NCBI RefSeq assembly: GCF_006345805.1
Contig: NC_042997.1
Span: 213,280,001-213,344,000, forward strand
DNA from: Octopus sinensis
Lineage: Eukaryota
DNA: 64,000 bases
Direction of reading: 5' to 3'
Under the pieces are notes generated by a model. That model was not told where the DNA came from and searched no databases. It saw only the letters and a list, made by a program, of their open reading frames with translations. This document shows, in pieces, positions 1,492 to 64,000 of this stretch (position 1 is the first letter of the stretch; each line of letters opens with the position of its first letter). Position numbers and translations under genes: made by a program.

Positions 1492-2761
1492 GTAAGTAGG
1501 AAGGTAGACAAATCACAAATGCCTTCAGGTAGATGGCCCTGCTCGATCTGTAGAAAAGGTGTAGGTAGAAACTCTATAAAATGCACCAAGTGTAAGCTAT
1601 GGACACATAAGAGATGCAGCAATGTCAAAGGAAGGCTAACTAGGAAAATAGTTTTTGTATGTGGCAGATGCTCAGGAGCAATAAACACTGAAAATGCGCA
1701 GAGACCAACATCCGCCACATTCCAGGGAGAAAAACTAGAAGTAGTTAATAGCTTCCGTTACCTAGGTGACCAAGTCAGTAGTGGGGGAGGCTATAAGAAT
1801 AGCCTGGGCAAAGTTCAGACAGCTCTTACCTCTGCTGGTGACAAAGGGCCACTCGCTCAGAGTAAAAGGCAGACTGTATGATGCATGTGTACGAACAGCC
1901 ATGCTACATGGTAGTGAAACATGGGCTGTGACTGCTGAGGATATGCGTAAGCTCGCAAGAAAGGAAACCAGTATGTTCCGATGGATGTGTAATGTCAGTG
2001 TACATACTCAACAGAGTGTAAATACCTTGAGAGAAAAGCTGGACCTAAGAAGCATCAGATGTTGTGTGCAAGAGAGACGTTTGCACTGGTATGGTCATGT
2101 GGTGAGAATAGATGAAGATAGTTGTATGAAAAAGTGCCACACCCTAGCGATTGAGGGCACCTGTGGAAGAGGTAGACCCAGGAAAACCTGGGACGAGGTG
2201 GTGAAGCACGACCTTCGAACTTTAGGTCTCACTGAGGAAATGACTAGAGACCGAGACCTTTGGAAGTATGCTGTGCGTGAGAAGACCCGGCAGGACAAGT
2301 GAGACTATAACCCGTGGCCTTTACCTGGGATGTAGCCAGTCCACTTATGCATACCTTTCCTTCTTGGGAGACAAAACTCTACTTGTGAAGACCTGTTGAG
2401 GCAAGTGAGAATCAGAATCGAAATCGATCAACATCAATGGAAATTGTAGCTGTGATACCAGCACCGGTGGCACGTAAGAGAACCATCCGAACGTGGCTGT
2501 TGCCAGCGCTGCCCCGACTGGCCTCCATACCGGTGGCACATAAAAAGCACCATTCAATCGTGGCCATTGCCAGCCTCGCCTGGCATGTAAAAAGCACCCA
2601 CTATACTCACGGAGTGGTTGGTGTTAGGAAAGGCATCCAGCCGTAGAAACATTGCCAGATCAGACTGGGCCTGGTGCAGCCAATCTGGCTTCCCAGACCC
2701 CAGTTGAACCGTCCAACCCATGCTAGCATGGAAAGCAGACACTAAACGATGATAATGATGA
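1492..2761 (+). mobile_element. 5'-truncated RTE-clade LINE (RT C-terminus with PHD-like insert, 3' UTR, (GAT)n tail)
   Basis: ORFs 1447-1881 and 1766-2302 give LEVVNSFRYLG, KGRLYDACVRTAMLHGSETW and GRGRPRKTW; one frameshift; 3' UTR with ~60-bp repeats ending in aaacgatgataatgatg. Confidence 0.9.
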
Positions 2762-8958: not shown

Positions 8959-10363
8959 GAATCGAAGGGCCTTAGAGTCAATCTAGCTAAAACCAAAGTC
9001 ATAATAAGTAGGAAGGTAGACAAATCACAAACGCCTTCAGGTAGATGGCCCTGCTCGATCTGTAGAAAAGGTGTAGGTAGAAACTCTATAAGATGCACCA
9101 AGTGTAAGCTATGGACACATAAGAGGTGCAGCAATGTTGAAGGAAGGCTAACTAGGAAGATGGTTTTTGTATGTGGCAGATGCTCAGGAACAATAAACAC
9201 TGAAAATGCTCTGAGACCAACTTCTGTTACTTTCCAGGAAGAAAAACTAGAAATAGTTGATAGCTTCCGTTACCTAGGTGACCAAGTCAGTAGCGGGGGC
9301 GGGTGTGCTGAAAGTGTAACTGCTAGAGTAAGAATAGCTTGGGCAAAGTTCAGAGAGCTCTTACCTCTGCTGGTGACAAAAGGCCTCTTGCTCAGAGTAA
9401 AAGGCAGACTGTATGACACGTGTGTACGAACAGCCATGCTACATGGCAGTGAAACATGGGCTGTGACTGCTGAGGATATGCATAAGCTCACAAGAAATGA
9501 AGCCAGTATGCTCCGATGGATGTGTAATGTCAGTACTCATACTCGACAGAGTGTAAGTACCTTGAGAGAAAAGCTGGACCTAAGAAGCATCAGTTGTGGT
9601 GTGCAAGAGAGATGTTTGCGCTGGTATGGTCATGTGGCGAGAATGGATGTAGATAGTTGTGTGAAAAAGTGCCACACCCTAGCAGTTGAGGGAACCTGTG
9701 GAAGAGGCAGACCCAGGAAAACCTGGTATGAGGTGGTGAAGCACGACCTTCGAACTTTAGGTCTCACTGAGGAAATGACTAGAGACCGAGACCTCTGGAA
9801 GTATGCTGTGCGCGAGAAGACCCGGCAGGACAAGTGAAACCATAACCCGTGGCCTTCTACATGGGATGTAGACAGCCCACTTATGCATACCTTTCCTTCT
9901 TGGGACACAAAACTCTACATGTGAAGACCTGTTGAGGCAAGTGAGAATCGAAATCGATCAATGGAAATTGCAGCTGAGTTACCAGTGCCGGTGGCACGTA
10001 AGAGAACCATCCGAATGTGGCCGTTGCCAGTGCCGCCCTGACTGGCCTCGTGCCGGTGGCACATAAAAAGCACCATCCGTTCATGGCCGTTGCCAGCGCC
10101 GCCCAGACTGGCCTCGTGCCAGTGGCACGTACAAAGCACCATCCGTCTGTGGCGTTTGCCAGCCTTGCTTGGCCCCCGTGCCGGTGGCACGTAAAAGGCA
10201 CCATCCGTTCGTGGCCGTTGCCAGCGCCGCCCCGACTGGCCACGGACGGATGGTGCTTTTTACGTGCCACCCGCACAGGTGCCAGACGGGGCTGGCAAAC
10301 GGCCACAGACGGATGGTGCTTTTTACGTGACACCGACATGGAGGCCAGTCGGGGCGGTGCTGG

Positions 10364-26962: not shown

Positions 26963-27420
26963 ATCATCATCGTTTAACGTCCGCTTTCCATGCTAGCAGG
27001 GGTCGGACGGTTTTGACTGAGGGTTGGCAAACCAGATGGCTGCACCAGGCTCCAATCTTGATCTGGCAGAGTTTCTACAAGCTGGATGCCCTTCCTAATG
27101 CCAACTGCTCCGTGAGTGTAGTGGGTGCCTTTTACGCGCCACTGGCATGCGGGCCAGTCAGGCAGTACTGACAATGACCTTGCTCAAATCATTTTACACA
27201 TGCTACCGGCACAGGTGCCAGTAAGGCGTCGTTGGTAACGATCATGCTTGAATGGTGCCCTTTTATGTGCCACGGCATGGGGGCCAGTCAGTGGGTACTG
27301 GCAATGACCTCGCTTGAATCTTTTTACACATGTCACTGGCACAGGTGCCAGTAAGGCAACGTTGGTAACGATCACGCTTGAATGGTGCCCTTTTACATGC
27401 CACCGGCACAAGTGCCAAAT
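26963..27420 (-). mobile_element. RTE 3' UTR fragment with subfamily-specific tandem repeats
   Basis: Shared RTE terminus plus repeats of ggcacaggtgccagtaaggc; inverted partner at 28930-29393. Confidence 0.75.
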
Positions 27421-33013: not shown

Positions 33014-34252
33014 TTAAGACTTTACTCTGGTGTGTATTCGTTCGTGTCTTTTTAACAGACTGTTAGTGATAAAAGATTTCTCACAGACTTTACAATGATA
33101 AGGTTTCTTACCAGTGTGTATTCTTCTGTGAACTACAAGATTAGAATCATCAGAGAATGATTTACCACATATTTCACAACGAAAGGGTTTTTCCCCAGTG
33201 TGGCTACGCATGTGGATAACAAGACTACAATTAACAGAGAATGATTTGCCACATATTTCACAATGGTACGGTTTTTCCCCAGTATGGCTACGTATATGGA
33301 TTTCAAGATTAGAATTATCAGAGAATGATTTGCCACATATTTCACAATGGAAAGGTTTTTCTCCAGTGTGGATTCGTTGGTGACTTGTCAAATCACTGCT
33401 ATTCACAAAACACTTCTGGCATACTCCACACTGGTAAGGTTTCTCTCCACTGTGGATCCGTTTGTGACTGGTTATATAGCTATTGTCAACAAACGATTTC
33501 CCGCATATATCACAGTGATAGGGTTTCTCTCCGCTGTGGATTCTTCTGTGTCTTGTTAAACTACTGTTATTGATAAAGCATTTGCCACACACATCACAGT
33601 GGAACGGTTTCTCTCCAGTGTGACTGCGTATGTGCACTACAAGACTTGAATTATCAGAGAAGCATTTCTCGCATATCTCACAGTGGAAAGGTTTCTCTCC
33701 GGTGTGGCAGCGTATGTGGCTAACGAGGCTGGAATTCTGAGTGAATGATTTGCCACACACATCGCAATGATAAGGTTTCTCGCCAGTGTGGATCCTTTTG
33801 TGAACGACAAGATAGGAATTATCAGTGAATGTTTTCCCACACACATCACAATAACAGGCTTTTTCGCCAGTGTGAATTATTCTATGTTTTTTAAGCTTAG
33901 AATTACTAACAAAAGATTTCCCGCATATTTCACAGTTGTAAGGTTTTTCTCCGCTGTGGATTCTTTTGTGCTTCGTTAAATAACTATTATAATCGAAAGA
34001 TTTCCCACAGATTTCACAGTGGAACGGTTTTCCTCTGTCGTGTATTTCTTTGTGTGCGAAGAATTCCCGTTCTGAAGAAAATGTTTTCTTACAAACCTCA
34101 CAGCAATATTCAGGAATATTTCTCTCTGGTGATGTTTGTTTAGTAAATGTCTCACAAGATAAAGAGGTCTCACCACTGTGTGTTTCTGTTACTGAATCGA
34201 TATTATTGAAAACGGTTGGGTTTAAAGTGTCCAAGGGATTAACGTCTTCCAT
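33014..34252 (-). CDS. C2H2 zinc-finger protein, 13 fingers
   Basis: 412-aa open frame; leader [12 protein letters not shown]... shared with paralogues at 24745 and 35168. Confidence 0.92.
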
Positions 34253-34998: not shown

Positions 34999-35167
34999 GT
35001 AAGTATCTTCATTAGTTAATTTAGTTAATTTAATTACGTCATTTATAGTAATTATTCGAATTATATCATGTAATCACAGTTCCGTATTATCTGAGACGAG
35101 AAACAGAATCCTAATCGATAGTATTCACGGGCATTTCCAGTTTTTGATGCTTCTCAAATTCTTTAAT

Positions 35168-36253
35168 ATGGAAGACGTTAATCCCTTGGACACTTTAAAC
35201 CCAACCGTTTTCAATGATATCGATTCAGTAACAGAAACACACAGTGGTGAGACCTCTTTATCTTGTGAGACATTTACTAAACAAACATCACCAGAGAGAA
35301 ATATTCCTGAATATTGCTGTGAGGTTTGTAAGAAAACATTTTCTTCGGAACGGGAATTCTTCGCACACAAAGAAATACACGACAGAGGAAAACCGTTCCA
35401 CTGTGAAATCTGTGGGAAATCTTTCGATTATAATAGTTATTTAACGAAGCACAAAAGAATCCACAGCGGAGAAAAACCTTACAACTGTGAAATATGCGGG
35501 AAATCTTTTGTTAGTAATTCGAATCTTGTTACTCACAAACGTAGTCACAGTGGAGAAAAACCTTATCGTTGTGATGTGTGCGGGAAAGCCTTTATGATCA
35601 ACAGTTATTTAACAGCACACAAACGAATCCACACTGGAGAGAAACCTTGCCGTTGCGAAATCTGTGGGAAATCCTTCTCTGATTGTTCCAGTCTTATAGT
35701 TCACAAACGCAGTCACACCGGAGAAAAACCTTATCAGTGTGATGTGTGCGGGAAAGCATTTGTTTCCAACAGTAATTTAACAAAACACAAGATAATACAC
35801 AGTGGAGAGAAACCGTTTCACTGTGAAATCTGTGGCAAATCTTTCACTCAGAATTCAAGTCTTGTAATTCACGTCCGTAGTCACACGGGAGAACAACCCT
35901 ATCACTGTGAAATTTGTGGGAAATCTTTTGGGAATAATCGTGATTTAAAGAGTCACGAACGAATCCATACTGGTGAAAAGCCGTACAATTGTGAAATTTG
36001 CGGGAAATCGTTTTCTGTTAATTCTTGTCTTGTGGTTCACAGGAGAATCCACACTGGAGAAAAACCTTATCATTGTGATGTATGTGGGAAATCGTTCTCT
36101 GATTATTCCAGTCTTGTAGTTCACAAAAGAATCCATACCGGTGAAAAGCCATATCGATGTGGAATCTGTGCTAAATCATTTATCACAAATGGTCACTTAA
36201 AAACACACACACAAATACACAGTGGCGAAAAGTCTTTTAACTGTGAAATGTAA
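35168..36253 (+). CDS. C2H2 zinc-finger protein, 11 fingers
   Basis: Open frame from ATG 35168; acceptor catttccag at 35132-35140; AATAAA at ~36305. Confidence 0.92.
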   Translation: MEDVNPLDTLNPTVFNDIDSVTETHSGETSLSCETFTKQTSPERNIPEYCCEVCKKTFSSEREFFAHKEIHDRGKPFHCEICGKSFDYNSYLTKHKRIHSGEKPYNCEICGKSFVSNSNLVTHKRSHSGEKPYRCDVCGKAFMINSYLTAHKRIHTGEKPCRCEICGKSFSDCSSLIVHKRSHTGEKPYQCDVCGKAFVSNSNLTKHKIIHSGEKPFHCEICGKSFTQNSSLVIHVRSHTGEQPYHCEICGKSFGNNRDLKSHERIHTGEKPYNCEICGKSFSVNSCLVVHRRIHTGEKPYHCDVCGKSFSDYSSLVVHKRIHTGEKPYRCGICAKSFITNGHLKTHTQIHSGEKSFNCEM

Positions 36254-36386: not shown

Positions 36387-36522
36387 TAATAATGATAATA
36401 ATAATGAAATTATTGTATACAGTGCTCAGGTGCACCACAACTTGTCAGAAAGTGCGTATAAAGTACATGCAGTAATGTAGAAATGTCTGGAAAGCGAACA
36501 ATGTATGAGTCAGATACATGCT
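36387..36522 (-). mobile_element. CR1-like LINE terminal fragment
   Basis: Reverse complement of the CR1 3' UTR with tail. Confidence 0.8.
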
Positions 36523-36655
36523 TGTATCTGACTCCAATATATATATATTGTATCTGACTCCAATATATATATATTGTATCTGACTCCAATATATATATAT
36601 TGTATCTGACTCCAATATATATATATTGTATCTGACTCCAATATATATATATTGG
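36523..36655. repeat. Five tandem 26-bp units at the CR1 truncation junction
   Basis: tgtatctgactccaatatatatatat starting at 36523, 36549, 36575, 36601 and 36627. Confidence 0.95.
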
Positions 36656-38753: not shown

Positions 38754-39067
38754 ACTCAGTTATATTTTTGAAACATTACACCTTCCACAGCAGTGATGGT
38801 CTTCTCCAATTGTCACATTCTCTCATATTGCTTTGTATTTTTCAGGATTGTTTTCAGATTTAGATCTAGTTTTTTTCCACAACTATCATATGACTACTTC
38901 TCAGCATTTAAAATTTCTTTGCTGAATCTGTTCATATTTGGTCGTCAGTTTTCTTAAGGATGATTCCATTTTTACTAACCTCTTCCTCTCTCTGAATATC
39001 TGCACCAAGACACAGTGAATGGTGATCACCAACTGACTTTGCAAAAGATTCACATCACTCGTTAAAA

Positions 39068-39356
39068 GCACCATCCGTTCATGGCCGTTTGCCAGCTCTA
39101 TCTGACCCCCGTGTCAGTGGCACGTAAAAGCACCATCCGTTCGTGTCCGTTGCCAGCCTCGCCTGGCACCTGTGCGGGTGGCACGTAAAAAGCACCCACT
39201 ACACTCATGGAGTGGTTGGCGTTAGGAAGGGCATCCAGCCGTAGAAACACTGCCAGATCTGACTGGGCCTGACGAAGCCTTCCAGCTTCACAGACCCCAG
39301 TTGAACCGTCCAACCCATGCTAGAATGGAAAGTGGACGCTAAATGATGATGATGAG
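39068..39356 (+). mobile_element. RTE 3' UTR fragment
   Basis: ~60-bp UTR repeats, shared terminus and (GAT)n tail. Confidence 0.8.
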
Positions 39357-43483: not shown

Positions 43484-45398
43484 TAGGGCGTAACAAATAT
43501 CAGAAAATCAAAAAAAAATGTGTGTAATAGGTGTAAAACAACTTCCTATGAACGAATATGAAAAAAAAAATTCGCGCACGCGAAAGGGGGGTGGGGGAGA
43601 GGCCTCGGAAAATTCACATCGGGAAGTTCCGAAAGCGTCTGAGGAGCTGACCCGGGCACCAAAACAAAAAAAAAATAGTGTAATATGTGTAAAACAACTT
43701 GCTCTAAACGAATATGACAAAAAAAAATGCGCTCTCGCGAAAGAGGGGTGGGGGTGAGGCCTCGGAATATTTATATCGGGAATTTCCGAAAGCGTCTGAA
43801 CCGGGCACAAAAACAAAAACAGCGTAATAGGTGTAAAACAACTTGCTCTAAACGACTATCATGAAAAAAATGCGCGCTCGCAAAAGGGGGGTGGGGGGAG
43901 GCTTCGGAAATTTCACATCTTCAGTCCACGGCCTTTAAACTAAGAAAAAATAGTGTAATTGGTGTAAAACTACTTGTTCTAAACGAGTATCAAGAACACA
44001 CACTCACACATGAATCATAAACTCCGTATTTCGAAAAAAAAAAAATAAAGAGAAGAAATTCTGGAAAAAGTGAAGAAATGTTGGATCTCCGCCATGTGAA
44101 TCAAAATACGTGTCAGAAACATCTTGAAATACTACAGAAATTATGTTACGAAAATGATAATGTATACATACCTCTTTGAGTGGTCCATCGATAATGATGA
44201 TAAAGAAATGAGTTGGATTTGAACTCAGAATATTGACTAACACAACTACATACTACAAGACTCAAAATATTCAGCCAAGTCACCACCCTTTAACTAGCAA
44301 TAATAATAACATCAATAACATAACAGCCAAAAGATTTATTTGTTCTGAAAATAACAATCATAGTAAATAAATATGTTCTTTAATATTCACATTCATGTGC
44401 ACAGTTTAAAACACTTACATACAAACAGTCACGCATGCATAATACAGAACGGAACACATAAATGAAGGATGCATTACTTAGTATATATTACATCTAGAGA
44501 ATTTTGATTAATAAGTCAAATATGCAAATTATAAAGATAATTAATTGCTTTACAAACAGTGTTGTAAAGGTGAAAAAAATAAATTTGGGAAAAAAATACA
44601 CGCCAAAACTAATTAATAAAGGATAATTAGGGAAGGATTGACACAAAATAATAATTTTTTCTGTCTCTTTTTTTCTGATAAATGCATCTTAATAAGTGAG
44701 AAGAATTGCATATATCTGAACTATTTCAAAGAAAAGCATAAATTTAATGTTTAAAATAGCTTTAACCAAGGAATGAGATCCAACATTTCTTCACTTTTCC
44801 AGAATTTCTTCTCTTTATTATTTATTTTTTTTTGCGAAATATGTACAAAAATACGGAGTTTATGATTCATGTGTGAGTGTGTGTTCTTGATACTCGTTTA
44901 GAACAAGTAGTTTTACACCAATTACACTATTTTTTCTTAGTTTAAAGGCCGTGGACTGAAGATGTGAAATTTCCGAAGCCTCTCCCCCACCCCCCTTCGC
45001 GAGCGCGCATTTTTTTCATGATAGTCGTTAGAGAGCAAGTTGTTTTACACCTATTACGCTGTTTTTGTTTTTGTTTTTGTGCCCGGTTCAGACGCTTTCG
45101 GAAATTCCCGATATAAATATTCCGAGGTCTCTCCCCCACCCCTCTTTCGCGAGAGCGCATTTTTTTTTTCATATTCGTTTAGAGCAAGTTGTTTAACATA
45201 TTACACTATTTTTTTTTGTTTTGGTGCCCGGGTCAGCTCCTCAGACGCTTTCGGAACTTCCCAATGTGAATTTTCCGAGGCCTCTCCCCCACCCCCTTTC
45301 GCGTGCGCGAATTTTTTTTTTCATATTCGTTCATAGGAAGTTGTTTTACACCTATTACACACATTTTTTTTTTGATTTTCTGATATTTGTTACGCCCT
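43484..45398. mobile_element. Foldback-like element: ~610-bp TIRs each with three ~125-130-bp subrepeats, ~690-bp AT-rich spacer
   Basis: TA|TAGGGCGTAACAAATATCAG ... CTGATATTTGTTACGCCCTA|TA; arms ~43484-44090 and ~44776-45398; no ORF. Confidence 0.85.
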
Positions 45399-48348: not shown

Positions 48349-49545
48349 ATGCCAAAAGAGCTAGGAAAATCATCGTACCATAATGACATCAGCAAAATAT
48401 CATTCTCAGAAAGAGGAAACCTAACTATTCAGAAACATAGTACAAGAGACAAACTGTATCACTGTGATATATGTAACAAATCGTTCTCTGAAGCAAGTGT
48501 CTTAACTAGACACAAACGTATTCATACAGGAGAAACCCCATATCACTGTGATACCTGTGGTAAATCATTCTTTCAAACAAGTGACTTAACAAGACACAAA
48601 CGAATTCATACAGGAGAAAAACCATATCAGTGTGACATTTGTGGTAAATCATTTTCTCAAAATGGTGAAGTTACTACTCACAAACGTATTCATACAGGAG
48701 AAAAGCCATATCACTGTGACATCTGTGGTAAATTATTCTCTGCAACAAGTCACTTAACTACTCATAAACGTATTCATACAGGTGAGAAACCCTATTGCTG
48801 TGATATCTGTGGTAAATCATTCTCTGTAAATAGTGATTTGACTTCTCATAAGCGTATTCACACAGGAGAAAAACCATATCATTGTAGTGTCTGTGGTAAA
48901 TCATTCTCTGAAAAAGGTAACCTGACTACTCACCACCGTATTCATACAGGAGAGAAACCCTATTGTTGTGATATCTGTGGTAAATCATTCTCTGGAAAAG
49001 GCAACTTAACAACTCATAGGCGTATTCATACAGGTGAGAAACCATATCACTGTGATATCTGTGGCAAATCATTCTCTGAAAATGGTATCTTGTCTAGACA
49101 TAAACGTATTCATACAGGTGAGAAACCGTATCACTGTGGTATCTGTGGCAAATCATTCTCTGAAAATGGTGTTTTAACTATACACAAACGTATTCATACG
49201 GGAGAAAAACCATATCACTGTGATATTTGTGGTAAATCATTTTCTGAAAATGGTGTCTTAACCATACACAGACGTATTCATACAGGAGAAAAACCATATC
49301 ACTGTGATATTTGTGGTAAATCATTCTCTGAAAAAGGTAATCTCATTACTCACAAACGTATTCATACGGGAGAAAAACCATATCACTGTGATATTTGTGG
49401 TAAATCATTCTCTGAAAATGGTGTCCTAACTATACACAAACGTATTCACACAGGAGAAAAACCATATCACTGTGATATCTGTGGGAAACCATTTTCTCAA
49501 AAAAGTCCCTTAACTACTCATCTAAGTATTCATATAGAAAAGTAA
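48349..49545 (+). CDS. C2H2 zinc-finger protein, 13 fingers plus one degenerate N-terminal finger
   Basis: 398-aa open frame; acceptor ctatatttcag at ~47967-47977. Confidence 0.92.
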
Positions 49546-53347: not shown

Positions 53348-53404
53348 ATAATAATAATGATGATGATGATGATAATAATAATAATAACGATAATGATCAT
53401 GATG

Positions 53405-53450
<46 letters not shown>

Positions 53451-53746
53451 CAATAATGATCATGATGATAATAATAATAATGATGATGATAGTAATGATA
53501 ATGATGATAGTAATAATAATGATAATGATAATAATAATCATAATAATAATGATGATAGTAATAATAAAAATAATAATTATAATAATAATAATGATAATAA
53601 TAATAACGATAATGATCATGATGATAATAATAATGATGATGATGATGATAGTAATAATAATAATAATAATAAAAATAATAATGATAATGATCATGATGAT
53701 AATAATAATGATGATGATGATGATAGTAATAATGATAATGATGATG

Positions 53747-53780
<34 letters not shown>

Positions 53781-53815
53781 TGATGATGATGATGATGATA
53801 ATAATAATAATGATA
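53348..53815. repeat. (AAT/GAT)n trinucleotide array
   Basis: Direct reading. Confidence 0.95.
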
Positions 53816-53817
53816 AA

Positions 53818-55640: not shown

Positions 55641-56090
55641 AGTAATGAATAATAATAATAATAATAATAATAGTAATACTAATAATAATAATAATAATGA
55701 TATTAAGAATAATAATAGTAGTAATAGTAGTAGTAGTAATAGTAATTGTAATACTAATAGTAATAGTAATAATAATAATAGTAGTAGTAGTAGTAGTTGT
55801 AGTGATAGTAGTAGTAGTAGTAATATTAATAGTAATAGAAATATTAATAGTAATGGTAATAATAATAATGATAATAGTAGTATAGTAGTAGTAGTATTAT
55901 TATTAGTAGTAGTATTAGTGGTAGTAGTAGTAGTAAAGGTAATAGTAATAATAATAATAATAGTAGTAGTAATATTAATGATAATGATAATAAAAATAAT
56001 AATCATAATTATAATAATAATAATAGTAGTAGTGGTAGTAGTAATAGTAATTGTAATAATAATAATAATATATGTAGCATAGTAGTAGTA

Positions 56091-56127
<37 letters not shown>

Positions 56128-56347
56128 TATTAATAATGATAATAATTATAATAATATTAATGATAATGATAATAATAATTATGTTAATAAGAATAACAAC
56201 TACAACAATAATAATAAAAATAAAATTAATAATAATATTATTTTTGATAATAATAATAATGATAATAATAATATTAATAATAATAATATCATTATTAATA
56301 ATAATATTAATAATAATAATGATAATAATAATAATAATAATAATAAT

Positions 56348-56462
56348 ATGAATAATATTCATCCGAACAAGAATTTGAATTCAGAATGAAGTGATGGGTG
56401 AAATGCAGTTGTAGCTTAGCACTTCGTCCAGCATACTAACGATTCCGCCAGCTTACCATCTT
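56348..56462 (-). mobile_element. SINE family C-like head embedded in the AAT array
   Basis: Inverted near-copy of 62089-62203. Confidence 0.7.
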
Positions 56463-56487
56463 AATAATAATGATGATGATGATGATG

Positions 56488-58077: not shown

Positions 58078-58689
58078 GTAATAATAATAATAATAATAAT
58101 GATAATAATAATAGTAATACTAATAATAAAAAAAAATAATAATATTAATAATAATAGTAGTAGTACTAGTAGTGGTATTAGTAATAGTAATAATAATAAT
58201 AGTAGTAGTAGTAATAGTAGTAGTAGTAGTTATATTAATAGTAATAGAAATATTAATAGTAATAATAGTAATGGTAATAATAATAATAGTAGTAGTAGTA
58301 GTAGTGGTAGTAGTAATAGTAGTAGTAGTAGTAGTAGTGGTAGTAGTTGTAGTAGTAGTAGTAAAGGTAATAGTAATAATATTAATAATAATAATAGTAG
58401 TAGTAGTAGTAATAGTAATATTAATGATAATGATAATAATAATAGTAGTAGTAGTAGTAGAAATTGTAATAATAATATATGTAGTATGTGTTATTAGTAA
58501 TAATAATAATAATAATAATATTAATAATGATAATAATTATAATAATAGTATTAGTATTAGTAGAAGTAGTAATATTAATAGTAATAATAATAATAGTAGT
58601 AGTGGTACTATTACTATCAATATTTCAATTACTATTACTGTTACTACTAATACTACTACTACTATCATTAATATTATTTTTATTATTAT

Positions 58690-58752
58690 ACATGGCAGTG
58701 CCCCAGCATGGCCACAGCTCATAAGCTGAAACTAGAATCAATCAATCAATCA
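58690..58752 (+). mobile_element. SINE family B-like 3' terminal fragment
   Basis: ggcagtgccccagcatggccacagctc..gctgaaactag followed by (ATCA)n. Confidence 0.55.
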
Positions 58753-58795
58753 ATTATTATTATTACTACCACTAATACTACTACAACTAAACTAC

Positions 58796-58834
<39 letters not shown>

Positions 58835-59666
58835 TACTATTAGTATTACTACTACTACTACTACTACAGCTTCTACTACTACTACTACTACTATTATTAT
58901 TATTATTATTAATATTATTATCATCATTACTATTATTATCATTATTACTATTACAATTACTAATACTATTACTACTACTACTAATACTACTACTAATATA
59001 ATATATATTATTATTATTATAATTATTATTATTTCTATTAATATTAATAATAATAATAATAATAATAATAGTAGTAGTAATAGTAGTAGAAGTAGTAAAA
59101 GTAGCAGCAGTAGCAGTAGTGGTCATAGTTGTAGTATTAGTAGTTGTAGTAGTAGTAGTATTAGTAATAGTAATAACAATAATAATGATAATGATAATAG
59201 TAATAATAATAATAATAATAACAGTAATAGTAGTAGTAGTAATACTATTACTATTAATATTTCAATTACTATTACTGTTACTACTACTACTACTATTATT
59301 ATTATTATTATTATTACTACTACTATTACTACTAATGTTATTATTATTATTATATTATTATAATTATCATTATTACTATTACTACTACTGCTACTACTAC
59401 TATTATTATTATTATAATTATCATAATTATTATTATTTTTATTACTATTACTATTACTATAAAAATTACTACTACTACAACTACTACGACTACTTCTACT
59501 ACTTCTACTACTACTAGTATTACTATATATTATATTATTATTATTATTATGATCATTATCATTATTATTATTTATTATTATTATTATTATTATCATTTAT
59601 ATTATTATTATTATTATTATTATTTTAATTATTATTATTATCATAGTACTACCATTATTATTATTA

Positions 59667-59706
<40 letters not shown>

Positions 59707-59798
59707 TAATATTATTATTAATATTATCATTAATATTAGTATTATTATTATTATCATTATTATTATTATCATTATTATTACGATTATTATTATTATTG

Positions 59799-59830
<32 letters not shown>

Positions 59831-60148
59831 GTCATTATTATTTTTTTATTATTAATTATTTTATTATCATTATTATTATCATTATTATAATTATTATTAT
59901 CATTATTAATATTATTATTATTATAATAATAATTATTATTAATTTTATTATTATTATTACTATTATTATTTTTATCATTATTGTTATTATTATTAATATT
60001 ATTATTAATATTATTATTATTTTTATTATCATTATTATTAATATTATTATTATTATTTTTATTATTATTATTATTATTATCATTATTATTATCATTATCA
60101 GTATCATTATTATTATTATTCATATTATTATTATTATCATCATTATCC

Positions 60149-60186
<38 letters not shown>

Positions 60187-60827
60187 ATTATTTTTTATTA
60201 TTATAATTATTATTTTTGTTATTATTACTATTATTATTATTGTTGTAATTATTATTACTATTATTATTATTGTAATTATTATTATTATTATTTTTATTAT
60301 TATTATTATTATCCTTATAATTAACATTATTATTAATATAATTATTATTATCATTTTTACTATTATCATAATCATTATCATTTTCATTATCATTATTGTT
60401 ATTATTTTTCTTCTTCTTATTCTTCTTATTGTTGTTGTTCTTGTTTTTATTGGTAATTTTATTATTATCATTATTATTATTATTATAATTATTATTAATA
60501 TTATTATATTATTATTATTATTGTTATTATTATTAACATTATTTTTATTTTTAATTAATATTTTTATTATTATTATTATCATTATCATTATCTTTATTAT
60601 TATTATTAATATTATCCTTATTATTATTATTATTATTATTATCATTATTATTATTATTATCATTGTTATAATTATCATTATTATTATTATTATCATTATT
60701 ATCATCATTATTATTATCATTATTATTATTAATATTATTATCATTATTATTATTTTTAATATCATTATCCTTATCATTGTCGTTATTATTGTTATTATTA
60801 TTATTATTATTACTATTATTATTATTC

Positions 60828-60858
<31 letters not shown>

Positions 60859-60982
60859 CATTATATTATTATTATTATTATTATTAATATTATTATCATT
60901 ATTATTATTTTTAATATCATTATCCTTATCATTGTCGTTATTATTGTTATTATTATTATTATTATTACTATTATTATTATTC

Positions 60983-61013
<31 letters not shown>

Positions 61014-61027
61014 CATTATTATTATTA

Positions 61028-61066
<39 letters not shown>

Positions 61067-61085
61067 CATCATTATTATTATTAAT

Positions 61086-61120
<35 letters not shown>

Positions 61121-61364
61121 CATTATTATTGTTATTATTATTATTATTACTATTATTATTATTCTTGTTATTATTATTATTATTATGATTATCCTTATTA
61201 TTATTATCATTATTAATATTATTAATATTATTATTATTCTTATTATTAATATTATTATTAGTAACATTATTATTATTATAAATATTATTTTTTATATTAT
61301 TATCATTAACACTATCATCATTATTATTATTATCATTATTATCATCATCATCATCATTATTATA

Positions 61365-61531
61365 ATGGTGAGCTTGCGGAATCGTTAGTACGCTGGACGA
61401 AGTGCTGAGCTTCAACTGCTTTTCACCCATCACTACCTTCTGAATTCAAATTCTTGTTCGGATGAAATGAGTATCTGCGGAGCATTGGGGTCGATGTGAT
61501 CTAATTGCCCTTCGGCACATATTCAGGCCTT

Positions 61532-61533
<2 letters not shown>
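61365..61533 (+). mobile_element. SINE family C-like copy followed by an (ATT)n array
   Basis: ggtgagcttgcggaatcgttag...tctgaattcaaattc...ggggtcgatgtg...caggccttgta. Confidence 0.7.
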
Positions 61534-61598
<65 letters not shown>

Positions 61599-61618
61599 CA
61601 TCATCATTATTATTATTA

Positions 61619-61658
<40 letters not shown>

Positions 61659-61832
61659 CATCATTATTAATATTAATATTATCATTATCATCATTATTAT
61701 TATTATTATTATTATCATCATTATTATTATTATTAATATTATCATTCTCCTTATCATATCATTATCATTATTACTTATATTATTATTATTAACATTATTA
61801 TTATTATTATTATTATTATTAGTATTGTTATT

Positions 61833-61863
<31 letters not shown>

Positions 61864-61928
61864 TAATCATTATCATTAATATTTTATATATAATTTTCAT
61901 TATCATTATTATTTTTTTTTATTATTTA

Positions 61929-61970
<42 letters not shown>

Positions 61971-62002
61971 CATTATTATCATTATTACTATTATTATTGT
62001 TA

Positions 62003-62039
<37 letters not shown>

Positions 62040-62088
62040 GATTATTATTATTATTATTATTATTATTATCATCATCATCTTCATTATT

Positions 62089-62203
62089 AAGATGGTAAGC
62101 TGGTGGAATCATTAGTATGCTGGACGAAGTGCTGAGCTACAACTGCATTTAACCCATCACTTCATTCTGAATTCAAATTCTTGTTTGGATGAATATTATT
62201 CAT
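62089..62203 (+). mobile_element. SINE family C-like head
   Basis: Inverted near-copy of 56348-56462. Confidence 0.7.
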
Positions 62204-62204
62204 A

Positions 62205-62243
<39 letters not shown>

Positions 62244-62390
62244 CATCATTATTTTCATTAACATTAACATTCTCATTATCATCATCATCATCATCATCAT
62301 TATTATTATTATTATTATTATTATTTTTTTTATTATTGCTATCATCATCATCAATATCATCATCATGATAATATAATAATTGTATTAATT

Positions 62391-62427
<37 letters not shown>

Positions 62428-62444
62428 CGATATTATAAATTTGT

Positions 62445-62502
62445 AGTCTAGGCACAAGGCTTGAAAATGTGCTGAGGGGCAATTAGTTCACATCGACCCC
62501 AA
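62445..62502 (-). mobile_element. SINE family C-like 3' fragment abutting the 22-bp array
   Basis: Reverse complement of the 3' part of 61365-61533. Confidence 0.6.
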
Positions 62503-64000
62503 TATCAAAGAGGTTCGCGAAAGAGTTCAAAGAGAAGTGTTGACAGAGATCAAAGAGGATGCCGGTAGAGATCAAAGAGATGTGCCGACAGAGATCAAAG
62601 AGGGTGCTGACACAGATCAAAGACGGTGCCGACAGAGATCAAAGATGGTGCCGACACAGATCAAAGATGGTGCCAACAGAGATCAAAGAGAGTGCCGACA
62701 TAGATCAAAGATGGTGCCGACAGTGATCAAAGAGGGTGCTGACACAGATCAAAGACGGTGCCGAAAGAGATCAAAGAGCGTGCCCACAGAGATCAAAGAG
62801 GGTACCGACAGAGATCAAAGAGGGTTCCGATCGAGATCAAAGGGCCTGCCGGTAGAGATCAAACAGGAGTGCCGATAGAGATCAAAGAGGGCGCAAACAT
62901 AGATCAAAGAACCTGCCGATAGAGATCAAAGAGGAGTGTCGACAGAAATCGAAGAGCGTGTCGGCAGAGATCAAAGACTGCCGAAAGAGATCAAAGAGGG
63001 TGCCGATAGAGATCAAAAAGCCGATAAAGTTCAAAGACGGTACCGTCAGAGATCAAAGATGGTGCCCACAGAGATCAAAGAGTGTGCCGACAGAGATCAA
63101 AGACGGTGCCGAAAGAGATCAAAGATGGTGCCGACATAAATCAAAGATGGTGCCGACAAACATTCCAGGCATTCCTGACATTTCTGATATTCCTGACATT
63201 CCAGACATTCCTGATATTCCAGCGATCAAAGAGCGTGCCGACAGAGATCAAAGAGGAGTGCCGTCAAAGATCAAAGCGGGCGCCGACAGAGATCAAAGAG
63301 GGTGCCGACATAGATCAAAGAGGGTGCCGACAGAGATCAAAGATGGTGCCGACAGAGATCAAAGATGGTGCTGACAGAGACCAAAGAGCGAGCCGACAGA
63401 GATTAAAGAGGAGTGCCGACAAAGAGGGCGCCGAAAGAGGTCAAGGAGCCCGCCGACAGTGATCAAAGAACGTTCCGACAGAGATCTAAGAGGGTCCCGA
63501 AAAAGATCAAAGAGCGGGCCGACAGAGATCAAGAAGAGATCAAAGAGGCTGCCAACAGTGATCAAAGACGGTGTCAAAAGATGTCATAGAGGGTGTCGAC
63601 ATAGATCAAAGGCGGTCCCGAAAGAGATCATAGAGAGTGCCGAAAGAGATCAAAGAGGAGTGTTGACAGAGATCAAAGAGGGTGCAGACAGAGATCAAAG
63701 TGTAGTGCCGAAAGAGATCAAAGAGGGTCCCGAAAGAGATCAAAGAGGAGTGTTGATAGAGATCAAAGAGGGTGCCGATAGAGATCAAAGAGGGTACCGA
63801 CAGAGCTCAAAGATCGTGTCGACAGAGATCACAGAGGGCGCCGGCAGAGGTCAAAGTGTCTGCCGCCAAAAATCAAAGATCGTGCCGACAGAGACAGAGT
63901 GTACTGAAAGAGTTCAAAGAGGAGTGTCGACAGAGATCAAAGAGGATGCCGAAAGAGATCAAAAAGGGTGCCGACAGAGATCAAAGAGCGTGCCGACAGA
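62503..64000. repeat. 22-bp minisatellite, consensus GCCGACAGAGATCAAAGAGGGT, about 64 units, continues past the window end
   Basis: ATCAAAG recurs at 22-bp spacing (e.g. 62594, 62616, 62638, 62660, 62682); some 20-23 bp variants. Confidence 0.95.
63161..63223. repeat. Seven 9-bp units (consensus CATTCCTGA) inserted in the 22-bp array
   Basis: cattccagg cattcctga catttctga tattcctga cattccaga cattcctga tattccagc. Confidence 0.95.

What the first reader, a model, noticed from the sequence alone, without database searches (positions are those of the whole stretch)
62503..64000. 22-bp satellite whose unit pairs a TCF/LEF site with a C-clamp Helper-like site (a natural TOPflash-like array)
Seen: about 64 units of GCCGACAGAGATCAAAGAGGGT. 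The ATCAAAG core and GCCGA are better preserved than the 3-4 nt after the core, and most CpGs survive. Established: TCF/LEF HMG boxes bind (A/T)(A/T)CAAAG; the standard Wnt reporter multimerises AGATCAAAGG; invertebrate TCFs carry a C-clamp that reads nearby GC-rich Helper sites (Drosophila GCCGCCR, core RCCG). Inference: each unit places an HMG site next to GCCGACA, so the array could be a Wnt-responsive super-element or a TCF sink at the edge of a ZNF cluster. Caveats: most units read ATCAAAGA rather than the optimal ATCAAAGG, and short motifs can match satellites by chance.
Basis: partly seen in the sequence, partly recalled or inferred. Interest (0 to 1): 0.8.

Follow-up and report, generated by a model that had tools for sequence, protein, structure and literature searches.

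The report
Degenerate 22-bp octopus satellite, TCF-like core
This is a real but old, non-coding 22-bp tandem repeat near the end of an Octopus sinensis chromosome scaffold; its unit resembles a Wnt/TCF binding site, only the TCF-core half is unusually well kept, and nothing here shows that it works as a Wnt element.

Summary
The array is real. It runs from 62504 to 64000 on the + strand, has period 22 and about 68 copies, and continues past the window end. The window is Octopus sinensis scaffold CM016859.1, and the array lies about 62 kb from the scaffold end.

Across 60 cleanly aligned units, a contiguous block A.AGATCAAAGA (positions 9 and 11-20) is 88-98% conserved. Site permutation gives P = 0.002-0.008, and this holds within base classes. 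The GCCGA "Helper" half is 83-90% conserved, no better than the array mean of 88% (P = 0.7-0.9). Intact Helper-like and core motifs do not co-occur more than independence predicts.

The relaxed definitions fit: CTTTGWWS 47 times, RCCG 40 times, in AK4 and KK0 geometry. The strict ones fail: SCTTTGWWS 3 times, GCCGCCR once, TOPflash ATCAAAGG twice.

Units are about 79% identical to each other with no higher-order repeat. There is no long ORF and no protein homologue. The flanks are kilobases of (TTA)n and a truncated SINE-like copy.

My best reading is an ordinary decaying satellite or minisatellite with a conserved box of unknown cause. TCF binding in vitro is plausible. A Wnt enhancer or TCF sink role is untested and unlikely, about 8%.

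The parts
62504..64000 (+). 22-bp tandem array, about 68 units, consensus GTGCCGACAGAGATCAAAGAGG. It is purine-rich on the + strand and runs off the window end, so its true length is unknown.
   Evidence: TRF gives period 22, 68 copies and 73% matches. Wrap-around alignment into units. 46 near-consensus 20-mers, all inside the array.
62582..62603 (+). One perfect consensus unit, used as the reference for position numbering (position 1 = 62582).
62591..62601 (-). HMG/TCF-like site of the reference unit. The - strand reads TCTTTGATCTC, against the fly 11-bp consensus SCTTTGWWSWW, with mismatches at positions 1 and 11. Positions 11-20 of the unit form the conserved block, 88-98% across units.
   Evidence: consensus from PMC4154663
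62584..62590 (+). Helper-like GCCGACA of the reference unit, against GCCGCCR, with a mismatch at position 5. It holds the single CpG of the consensus unit. Conservation of GCCGAC (unit positions 3-8) is 63-90%, no better than the array mean; its last base, A at position 9, is 98% conserved and belongs to the conserved block.
   Evidence: Helper definition from PMC4154663
63160..63222 (+). Secondary 9-bp repeat (ACATTCCTG, 6.8 copies) that has replaced about three units inside the array.
62454..62503 (+). Truncated SINE-like fragment forming the left boundary. Homology to the other copy (reverse complement of 61484-61533, 90%) stops exactly where the array starts.
58798..62427 (.). Upstream flank: kilobase-scale (TTA)n/(ATT)n microsatellite tracts interrupted by SINE-like pieces (61358-61463, 62085-62190).

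Best explanation
This is a non-coding, old and degenerate 22-bp satellite or minisatellite array. It sits in a repeat-rich, gene-poor stretch within about 62 kb of the end of Octopus sinensis scaffold CM016859.1.

I infer that it arose and grew by replication slippage and unequal exchange, and that it is now decaying without recent homogenisation. Its consensus happens to contain a moderate-quality TCF/LEF-type HMG core (GATCAAAGA) next to a GC-rich segment. The array has no demonstrated Wnt function.

What is shown: the array, its unit, its non-coding nature, its flanks, the lack of higher-order structure, and a real conserved 10-12-bp box (A.AGATCAAAGA) beside a variable GC-rich half.

What is inferred: the mode of origin. 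Part of the conserved/variable contrast is mutational. G/C sites changed 2.7 times as often as A/T sites, and the core is A/T-rich. The remainder, C15, G19 and G12, is either history or weak constraint by some DNA-binding protein.
For: The array and unit are established.

Homogenisation is absent. Mean unit-to-unit identity is 0.79 at every lag from 1 to 15, and 53 of 60 units are distinct types, so there is no higher-order repeat and no recent homogenisation.

The array is not coding. The longest ORF is 138 aa, all three + frames are broken repeatedly, and every - frame hits TGA once per 66 bp. The 22-aa repeat translation has no homologue among 5.8 billion proteins. No Pfam hit reaches its cut-off, and no Rfam family matches.

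The context is repeat-rich. There are more than 3 kb of (TTA)n, SINE-like pieces and LINE fragments upstream. Only one gene is called in the 21 kb spanning window 38.3-59.5 kb. The scaffold ends about 62 kb further on.

Composition explains part of the pattern. A/T sites in the core are not significantly better kept than A/T sites elsewhere (4.7% against 7.7% changed, P = 0.17). The excess conservation rests on C15 and G19.

The Helper-like half is at or below average conservation, and the half-sites are retained independently.

Chance is not negligible. 1-2% of random 22-mer units carry WWCAAAG, 0.16-0.35% also carry RCCG, and 45% carry at least one of 30 textbook TF cores. A second repeat nested in the array carries a TEAD-type CATTCC core.
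Against: The conserved block is contiguous and statistically real (P = 0.002-0.008 by site permutation, also within base classes). It coincides almost exactly with the 11-bp footprint of a TCF HMG domain.

C15 and G19 are the two least-changed of the ten non-CpG G/C sites: 2.5% against 21.5% changed elsewhere. A purely neutral decay model does not predict that.

The Helper-like site sits in a published preferred orientation (AK4).

Genome-wide copy number, chromatin state and conservation across species could not be examined.
Confidence: 0.6

Rival explanations
1. The conserved 10-12-bp box (A.AGATCAAAGA) is the binding site of some sequence-specific protein other than TCF. Candidates are a SOX-type HMG protein (WWCAAWG also fits, from my own knowledge), one of the many octopus C2H2 zinc-finger proteins, or a satellite or heterochromatin-binding protein. 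The array would then act in chromatin organisation, in the way boxes in other satellites do.
For: There is a contiguous conserved block next to a variable half. ATCAAAG also satisfies the SOX consensus. The array sits at the end of a C2H2 zinc-finger gene cluster and near a scaffold end. Units at the degenerate left edge keep the core while the other half has diverged.
Against: No binding data exist. Part of the contrast is compositional. With about 68 redundant units, selection on each unit would be very weak. Copies elsewhere in the genome could not be examined.
Confidence: 0.2
2. One reading: the array is a natural multimer of bipartite TCF sites (an HMG site plus a C-clamp Helper site) that acts as a Wnt/beta-catenin-responsive element or as a sink that titrates TCF.
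For: CTTTGWWS occurs 47 times and RCCG 40 times. There are 26 AK4 pairs and 28 KK0 pairs. AK is a preferred orientation, and a Helper in any orientation increases TCF/Pan binding (PMC4154663). RCCG alone enhances binding of C-clamp TCF1E genome-wide (PMC4267635). The conserved block matches the HMG footprint. Non-vertebrate TCFs generally carry a C-clamp (PMC4267635).
Against: The Helper-like positions are not conserved above average (P = 0.74-0.87). GCCGCCR occurs once and RCCGCC once or twice. In the fly assay all seven Helper positions matter, and the unit has A at position 5. SCTTTGWWS occurs only 3 times and ATCAAAGG twice. Half-sites are retained independently. [quoted passage not shown] The setting is repeat-rich and gene-poor. 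The motif match was found after the fact. Whether cephalopod TCF has a C-clamp was not checked here.
Confidence: 0.08
3. The array is the internal tandem-repeat region of a mobile element whose other parts lie beyond the window end. It would then be one of many dispersed copies.
For: The window is full of transposon debris. The array's right end is not visible. Internal minisatellites in transposons are common (my own knowledge).
Against: No other copy exists in the 64-kb window. The unit has no significant similarity to the adjacent SINE-like element (P = 0.32). The left boundary is a truncated SINE, not a recognisable transposon terminus.
Confidence: 0.1
4. The array encodes a repetitive charged protein with the 22-aa repeat VPTEIKEGADRDQRGCRQRSKR, where 66 bp equals three units.
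For: The consensus has no stop codon in any + frame.
Against: ORFs reach at most 138 aa, and frames are broken by stops and by 20-, 21- and 23-bp units. There are no protein homologues, no significant Pfam hit and no gene called there.
Confidence: 0.01

Closest known systems
Satellite or minisatellite DNA with a conserved protein-binding box inside otherwise variable monomers, such as the CENP-B box in alpha and minor satellites (from my own knowledge)
   Same: Head-to-tail non-coding array. A short contiguous block is much better kept than the rest of the monomer. The location is near a chromosome-scaffold end.
   Different: The monomer is only 22 bp. The array seen here is at least 1.5 kb, with total size unknown. 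No binding protein is known. Homogenisation is absent: units are 79% identical and there is no higher-order repeat.
TOPflash and other synthetic HMG-Helper Wnt reporters (Archbold et al. 2014, PMC4154663)
   Same: A multimerised (A)GATCAAAG core. On the - strand the unit TGTCGGC-ACCC-TCTTTGATCTC parallels the synthetic AK3 design TGGCGGC-ACT-CCTTTGATCTT.
   Different: The flanking G of AGATCAAAGG is A in 43 of about 47 cores. The Helper has A in place of C at position 5. Only about 40% of junctions keep both half-sites. There is no promoter context. The same paper states that such dense clusters are not found in natural Wnt modules.
Simple satellites bound by transcription factors, such as GAGA factor on the Drosophila AAGAG satellite, and the 12-site Su(Hw) array in gypsy (from my own knowledge)
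   Same: These are precedents for a tandem array of TF-type motifs acting as a binding platform or sink, with a conserved core and variable spacers.
   Different: In those cases binding is shown experimentally. Here nothing is shown.

Membership tests
Tandem-repeat (satellite/minisatellite) DNA | Head-to-tail copies of a fixed period, far beyond chance | tested here: met
   TRF gives period 22 and 68 copies. 46 near-consensus 20-mers against 0 in shuffles.
Tandem-repeat (satellite/minisatellite) DNA | Non-coding | tested here: met
   Longest ORF 138 aa. No homologues. No Pfam or Rfam family at threshold.
Tandem-repeat (satellite/minisatellite) DNA | Many arrays or high copy number genome-wide (satellite in the strict sense) | not testable with these tools
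   No cephalopod genome is searchable at the DNA level. Scans of the three collections gave 0 hits, as expected.
TCF/LEF HMG site (Wnt response element) | 8-bp WRE CTTTGWWS (PMC4267635) | tested here: met
   47 matches on the - strand in about 68 units.
TCF/LEF HMG site (Wnt response element) | Fly 9-11-bp consensus SCTTTGWWS(WW) and TOPflash core ATCAAAGG | tested here: not met
   SCTTTGWWS 3 times, SCTTTGWWSWW twice, ATCAAAGG twice. The consensus unit reads TCTTTGATCTC.
C-clamp Helper site | GCCGCCR (fly) or RCCGCC/GCCGCY (human extended) | tested here: not met
   GCCGCCR once, RCCGCC once or twice, GCCGCY once. The unit has GCCGACA. All seven positions matter in the fly reporter.
C-clamp Helper site | Short Helper RCCG within about 0-11 bp of an HMG site, in a productive orientation | tested here: met
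   RCCG 40 times. 26 AK4 pairs and 28 KK0 pairs. Orientation definitions come from Table S1 of PMC4154663.
C-clamp Helper site | Evidence of constraint on the Helper positions, or co-retention with the HMG site | tested here: not met
   GCCG P = 0.74 and GCCGACA P = 0.87. Both motifs in 27 units against 25.7 expected.
Wnt-dependent cis-regulatory module / TCF sink | TCF occupancy and a beta-catenin-dependent transcriptional response | not testable with these tools
   This needs EMSA or DAP-seq, ChIP or CUT&RUN, and reporter assays.
Wnt-dependent cis-regulatory module / TCF sink | The host TCF carries a C-clamp | not tested
   Taken from the literature for non-vertebrate TCFs in general (PMC4267635). 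The octopus protein was not examined.
SINE/TE-derived tandem repeat | Unit similar to a segment of the adjoining element | tested here: not met
   Local alignment of the unit trimer to the SINE-like copy is no better than shuffled units (P = 0.32 and 0.95). The first units against the SINE continuation give P = 0.76.

The most novel reading that the evidence does not exclude
The array is a genuine natural multimer of bipartite TCF sites in AK4 geometry (an HMG core plus a minimal RCCG Helper). Octopus TCF would bind it, and it would act as a Wnt-responsive super-element or a nuclear TCF sink. That would be an endogenous counterpart of TOPflash, which Archbold et al. say has not been seen in natural Wnt modules.
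Probability: 0.07. Interest if true: 0.75.

Novelty: new member of a known kind. Interest (0 to 1): 0.27.

Why it matters
If this is only a satellite, it adds one described tandem-repeat family to a poorly catalogued cephalopod repeatome. My paper searches found no study of cephalopod satellite DNA.

The one non-trivial result is the contiguous conserved box inside an otherwise decaying array. It is a concrete and cheap target for a DAP-seq or EMSA test. If TCF or another factor bound it, the array would be a natural high-density binding platform, relevant to how satellites titrate transcription factors.

The case also shows how easily textbook TF cores turn up in short repeat units: 45% of random 22-mers carry at least one.

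Tried and rejected
1. Coding repeat. Rejected: ORFs are short and broken, there are no homologues and no Pfam hit at threshold.

2. Origin from the adjoining SINE-like element. Rejected: similarity is no better than for shuffled units. The SINE copy is simply truncated at the array boundary.

3. Higher-order repeat or recent homogenisation. Rejected: identity is flat across lags.

4. Structured RNA. No Rfam family matches.

5. Copies elsewhere. There are none in the window. Exact two-unit pattern scans of the metagenome, viral and prokaryote genome collections gave 0 hits. These collections do not hold cephalopod DNA, so the result says little.

6. Walking past the window end through called genes. 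This failed. The LINE ORF and an array ORF are not on record, and only the zinc-finger gene at 48.3 kb is called within reach.

7. Finding the orthologous locus in a sister species through the zinc-finger protein. This failed. The search was swamped by generic C2H2 proteins, with a best identity of 63%.

8. Literature. I found no paper on cephalopod satellites and none linking tandem repeats to TCF sites.

9. I ran no further search on checking the octopus TCF C-clamp, because the Helper half already failed the conservation test.

Full report
**Observation.** The region 62504-64000 is a head-to-tail array of period 22. Tandem Repeats Finder gives 68.0 copies and 73% matches, and its 44- and 66-bp rows describe the same array. 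The 20-mer GCCGACAGAGATCAAAGAGG matches 46 times at 3 or fewer mismatches, all inside the array, and never in 100 dinucleotide shuffles. The array runs off the window end, so its length is unknown. About three units at 63160-63222 have been replaced by a nested 9-bp repeat, ACATTCCTG x 6.8.

**Where it is.** A zinc-finger ORF of the window is encoded on GCA_006345805.1 record CM016859.1, which is 213,406,131 bp long. That assembly is the chromosome-scale Octopus sinensis genome (bioRxiv 10.1101/2023.05.16.540928). The fetched loci map colinearly to the window. This puts window position 1 at 213,280,001 and the array at about 213,342,504 onward, roughly 62 kb from the scaffold end. The mapping assumes the locus keeps the record's orientation, which the round start coordinate supports. 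Otherwise the distance is about 90 kb.

Upstream lie five C2H2 zinc-finger ORFs, the nearest at 48349-49545. Next come LINE-type fragments at 53.8-57.9 kb, whose Pfam hits are weak and below cut-off. Then there are more than 6 kb of (TAA/TTA)n interrupted by SINE-like pieces. Only one gene is called in the 21 kb from 38.3 to 59.5 kb. The array's left edge is a truncated SINE-like copy. Homology to the other copy ends at ...CGACCCCAAT, exactly where the first ATCAAAGAGG begins. The unit itself is not derived from that element.

**Anatomy of the unit.** I aligned 60 units cleanly. Eight further rows with large deletions, or within the 9-mer insert, were set aside. Four of those have lost the core, so the figures below slightly flatter it.

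| Class | Positions | Consensus kept |
|---|---|---|
| Strongly conserved | 9, 11, 12, 14-20 | 92-98% |
| Intermediate | 1-7, 10, 13 | 80-90% |
| Hypervariable | 8, 21, 22 | 63-69% |

- The conserved positions form one contiguous block, A.AGATCAAAGA. Treating sites as the unit of permutation is robust to variants having spread by duplication. A contiguous window this low in changes arises in 0.2-0.7% of permutations, and in 0.5-0.8% when A/T and G/C sites are permuted separately.
- The a-priori HMG core (positions 13-19) has 17 changes against 50 expected (P = 0.0009).
- The Helper-like segment shows the opposite. GCCG has 35 changes against 28.7 expected (P = 0.74). GCCGA has 42 against 35.9 (P = 0.72). 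GCCGACA has 65 against 50.3 (P = 0.87).

**A composition- and CpG-aware look.**
- G/C sites changed 2.7 times as often as A/T sites (121/720 against 37/600), and the core is five-sevenths A/T.
- A/T sites inside the core are not significantly better kept than A/T sites outside it (4.7% against 7.7%, P = 0.17).
- The excess rests on C15 and G19 (2.5% against 21.5% for other non-CpG G/C sites). These are the two lowest of ten such sites, with G12 third.
- The CpG at positions 5-6 survives in 46 of 60 units. Eleven of its 15 changes are C>T or G>A. It is somewhat better kept than other G/C sites of the variable half (12.5% against 21.5%, P = 0.03) but sits at the array average.

It does not hold for GCCGA as a specially preserved element.

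**Array dynamics.** Mean unit-to-unit identity is 0.79 and is flat from lag 1 to lag 15. Fifty-three of 60 units are distinct. There is no higher-order repeat and no sign of recent homogenisation. This is an old, decaying array.

**Not coding, not RNA.** The consensus is open in all three + frames, but real ORFs stop at 138 aa or less. Frames are broken by stops and by 20-, 21- and 23-bp units. A search with the 22-aa repeat translation found nothing at E <= 0.001. No Pfam hit reaches its cut-off, and no Rfam family matches.

**Comparison with published TCF site definitions.** Archbold et al. 2014 (PMC4154663) define the fly HMG site as SCTTTGWWSWW and the Helper as GCCGCCR. Changing any of the first four Helper positions is as bad as destroying the site, and changing the last three is only slightly less severe. 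AK6 and FF0 are the best configurations, but a Helper in any orientation raises binding. Their Table S1 shows AK0 = TGGCGGC+CCTTTGATCTT and KK0 = CCTTTGATCTT+TGGCGGC. Hoverter et al. 2014 (PMC4267635) use the WRE CTTTGWWS and the Helper RCCGCC, with a minimal RCCG.

On the - strand the consensus unit reads TGTCGGC-ACCC-TCTTTGATCTC. Each HMG-like site therefore has a Helper-like site 4 bp upstream (AK4, spanning two units) and another immediately downstream (KK0). There is one mismatch in the Helper (position 5, C>A) and two in the 11-bp HMG site (positions 1 and 11).

| Motif | Count in array |
|---|---|
| CTTTGWWS | 47 |
| CTTTGWW | 50 |
| SCTTTGWWS | 3 |
| SCTTTGWWSWW | 2 |
| CCTTTGATC | 2 |
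| RCCG | 40 |
| GCCGCCR | 1 |
| RCCGCC | 1-2 |
| relaxed AK4 pairs | 26 |
| relaxed KK0 pairs | 28 |

Core and RCCG occur together in 27 of 60 units against 25.7 expected. The array meets the relaxed definitions and the geometry. It fails the full-length definitions. It shows no joint retention of the two halves.

**Chance.** WWCAAAG occurs in 1.1-1.8% of random 22-mer tandem units. WWCAAAG together with RCCG occurs in 0.16-0.35%. That is rare for one array. This 64-kb window alone holds more than twenty tandem-repeat loci, so a 2.7-Gb genome (size from my own knowledge) should hold many chance cases. This extrapolation is inference. More importantly, the motif was picked after reading the sequence. 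In all, 45% of random 22-mer units contain at least one of 30 textbook TF cores. The nested 9-mer repeat carries a TEAD-type CATTCC, and ATCAAAG equally fits the SOX consensus WWCAAWG (the motif list is from my own knowledge).

**Most likely explanation and rivals.**
- *Best reading (0.6).* An ordinary non-coding satellite or minisatellite that grew by slippage and unequal exchange and is now decaying. Its consensus happens to resemble an AK-type TCF site. The conserved box is real. It is partly explained by A/T against G/C mutability and is otherwise unexplained.
- *Other binding protein (0.2).* The box is bound by some other protein, such as a SOX-type HMG protein, a C2H2 zinc-finger protein or a satellite-binding protein, as boxes in other satellites are.
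Recombinant TCF HMG domain would probably bind GATCAAAGA in vitro. That is inferred from the published consensus and was not tested. The unconserved and imperfect Helper, the independent decay of the halves, the repeat-desert setting, and the statement that dense HMG clusters are not seen in natural Wnt modules all argue against a selected bipartite element.
- *Transposon-internal array (0.1).* This cannot be excluded because the right end is out of view.
- *Coding repeat.* Effectively excluded.

**Novelty and interest.** This is a new member of a known kind, a satellite with a conserved box. I found no literature on cephalopod satellites or on TCF-motif tandem repeats. Interest is low to moderate. 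The array is ordinary unless binding is shown. The conserved box offers a cheap, well-defined experiment.

**What failed.** I could not extend past the window end. I could not reach orthologous loci. The DNA-searchable collections do not contain cephalopod genomes. I did not check whether octopus TCF has a C-clamp.

Noticed in passing
window 63160-63222: A secondary 9-bp repeat (ACATTCCTG, 6.8 copies) is nested in the 22-bp array and replaces about three units. Its unit carries CATTCC, the TEAD/M-CAT core. This is a second textbook TF motif multimerised by chance in the same 1.5 kb.
   Followed up: partly
window 56361-56466 (-), 61358-61463 (+), 62085-62190 (+), 61484-61533 / 62454-62503: Copies of a roughly 180-nt SINE-like element, 88-95% identical, each embedded in kilobase-scale (TAA/TTA)n tracts (53348-53816, 55643-56357, 58079-62069, 62194-62427). 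The microsatellites may have grown from the element's tails. One copy is truncated exactly at the array boundary.
   Followed up: partly
window 43504-45374: An element of about 1.9 kb with terminal inverted repeats of about 520 bp. The repeats are built of roughly 155-bp subrepeats, and the arms are 97-98% complementary. It looks like a foldback or TIR-type DNA transposon.
   Followed up: partly
window 33014-34252 (-) and 35144-36253 (+): A head-to-head pair of C2H2 zinc-finger ORFs. Their first 127 or so residues are nearly identical, while the finger arrays have diverged (73% identity overall). This suggests an inverted duplication followed by finger turnover.
   Followed up: partly
window 36522-36654: A perfect 26-bp repeat of 5.1 copies (TTGTATCTGACTCCAATATATATATA) at 100% identity, hence very recent.
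   Followed up: no
window 1766-2302 and 9160-9837; 9985-10241, 27124-27408, 39063-39196: Two fragments of the same LINE-type ORF family (...RVKGRLYDACVRTAMLHGSETWAVT...). Also three 62-130-bp tandem arrays that appear to share a GC-rich motif of the type GTGCC.GTGGCACGTAAAAAGCACC, probably another dispersed element.
   Followed up: no
window 62503-64000, + strand: The array is strongly strand-asymmetric. 16 of 22 consensus bases are purines on the + strand. GC skew is +0.18 and AT skew +0.26 in the last 2 kb.
   Followed up: no
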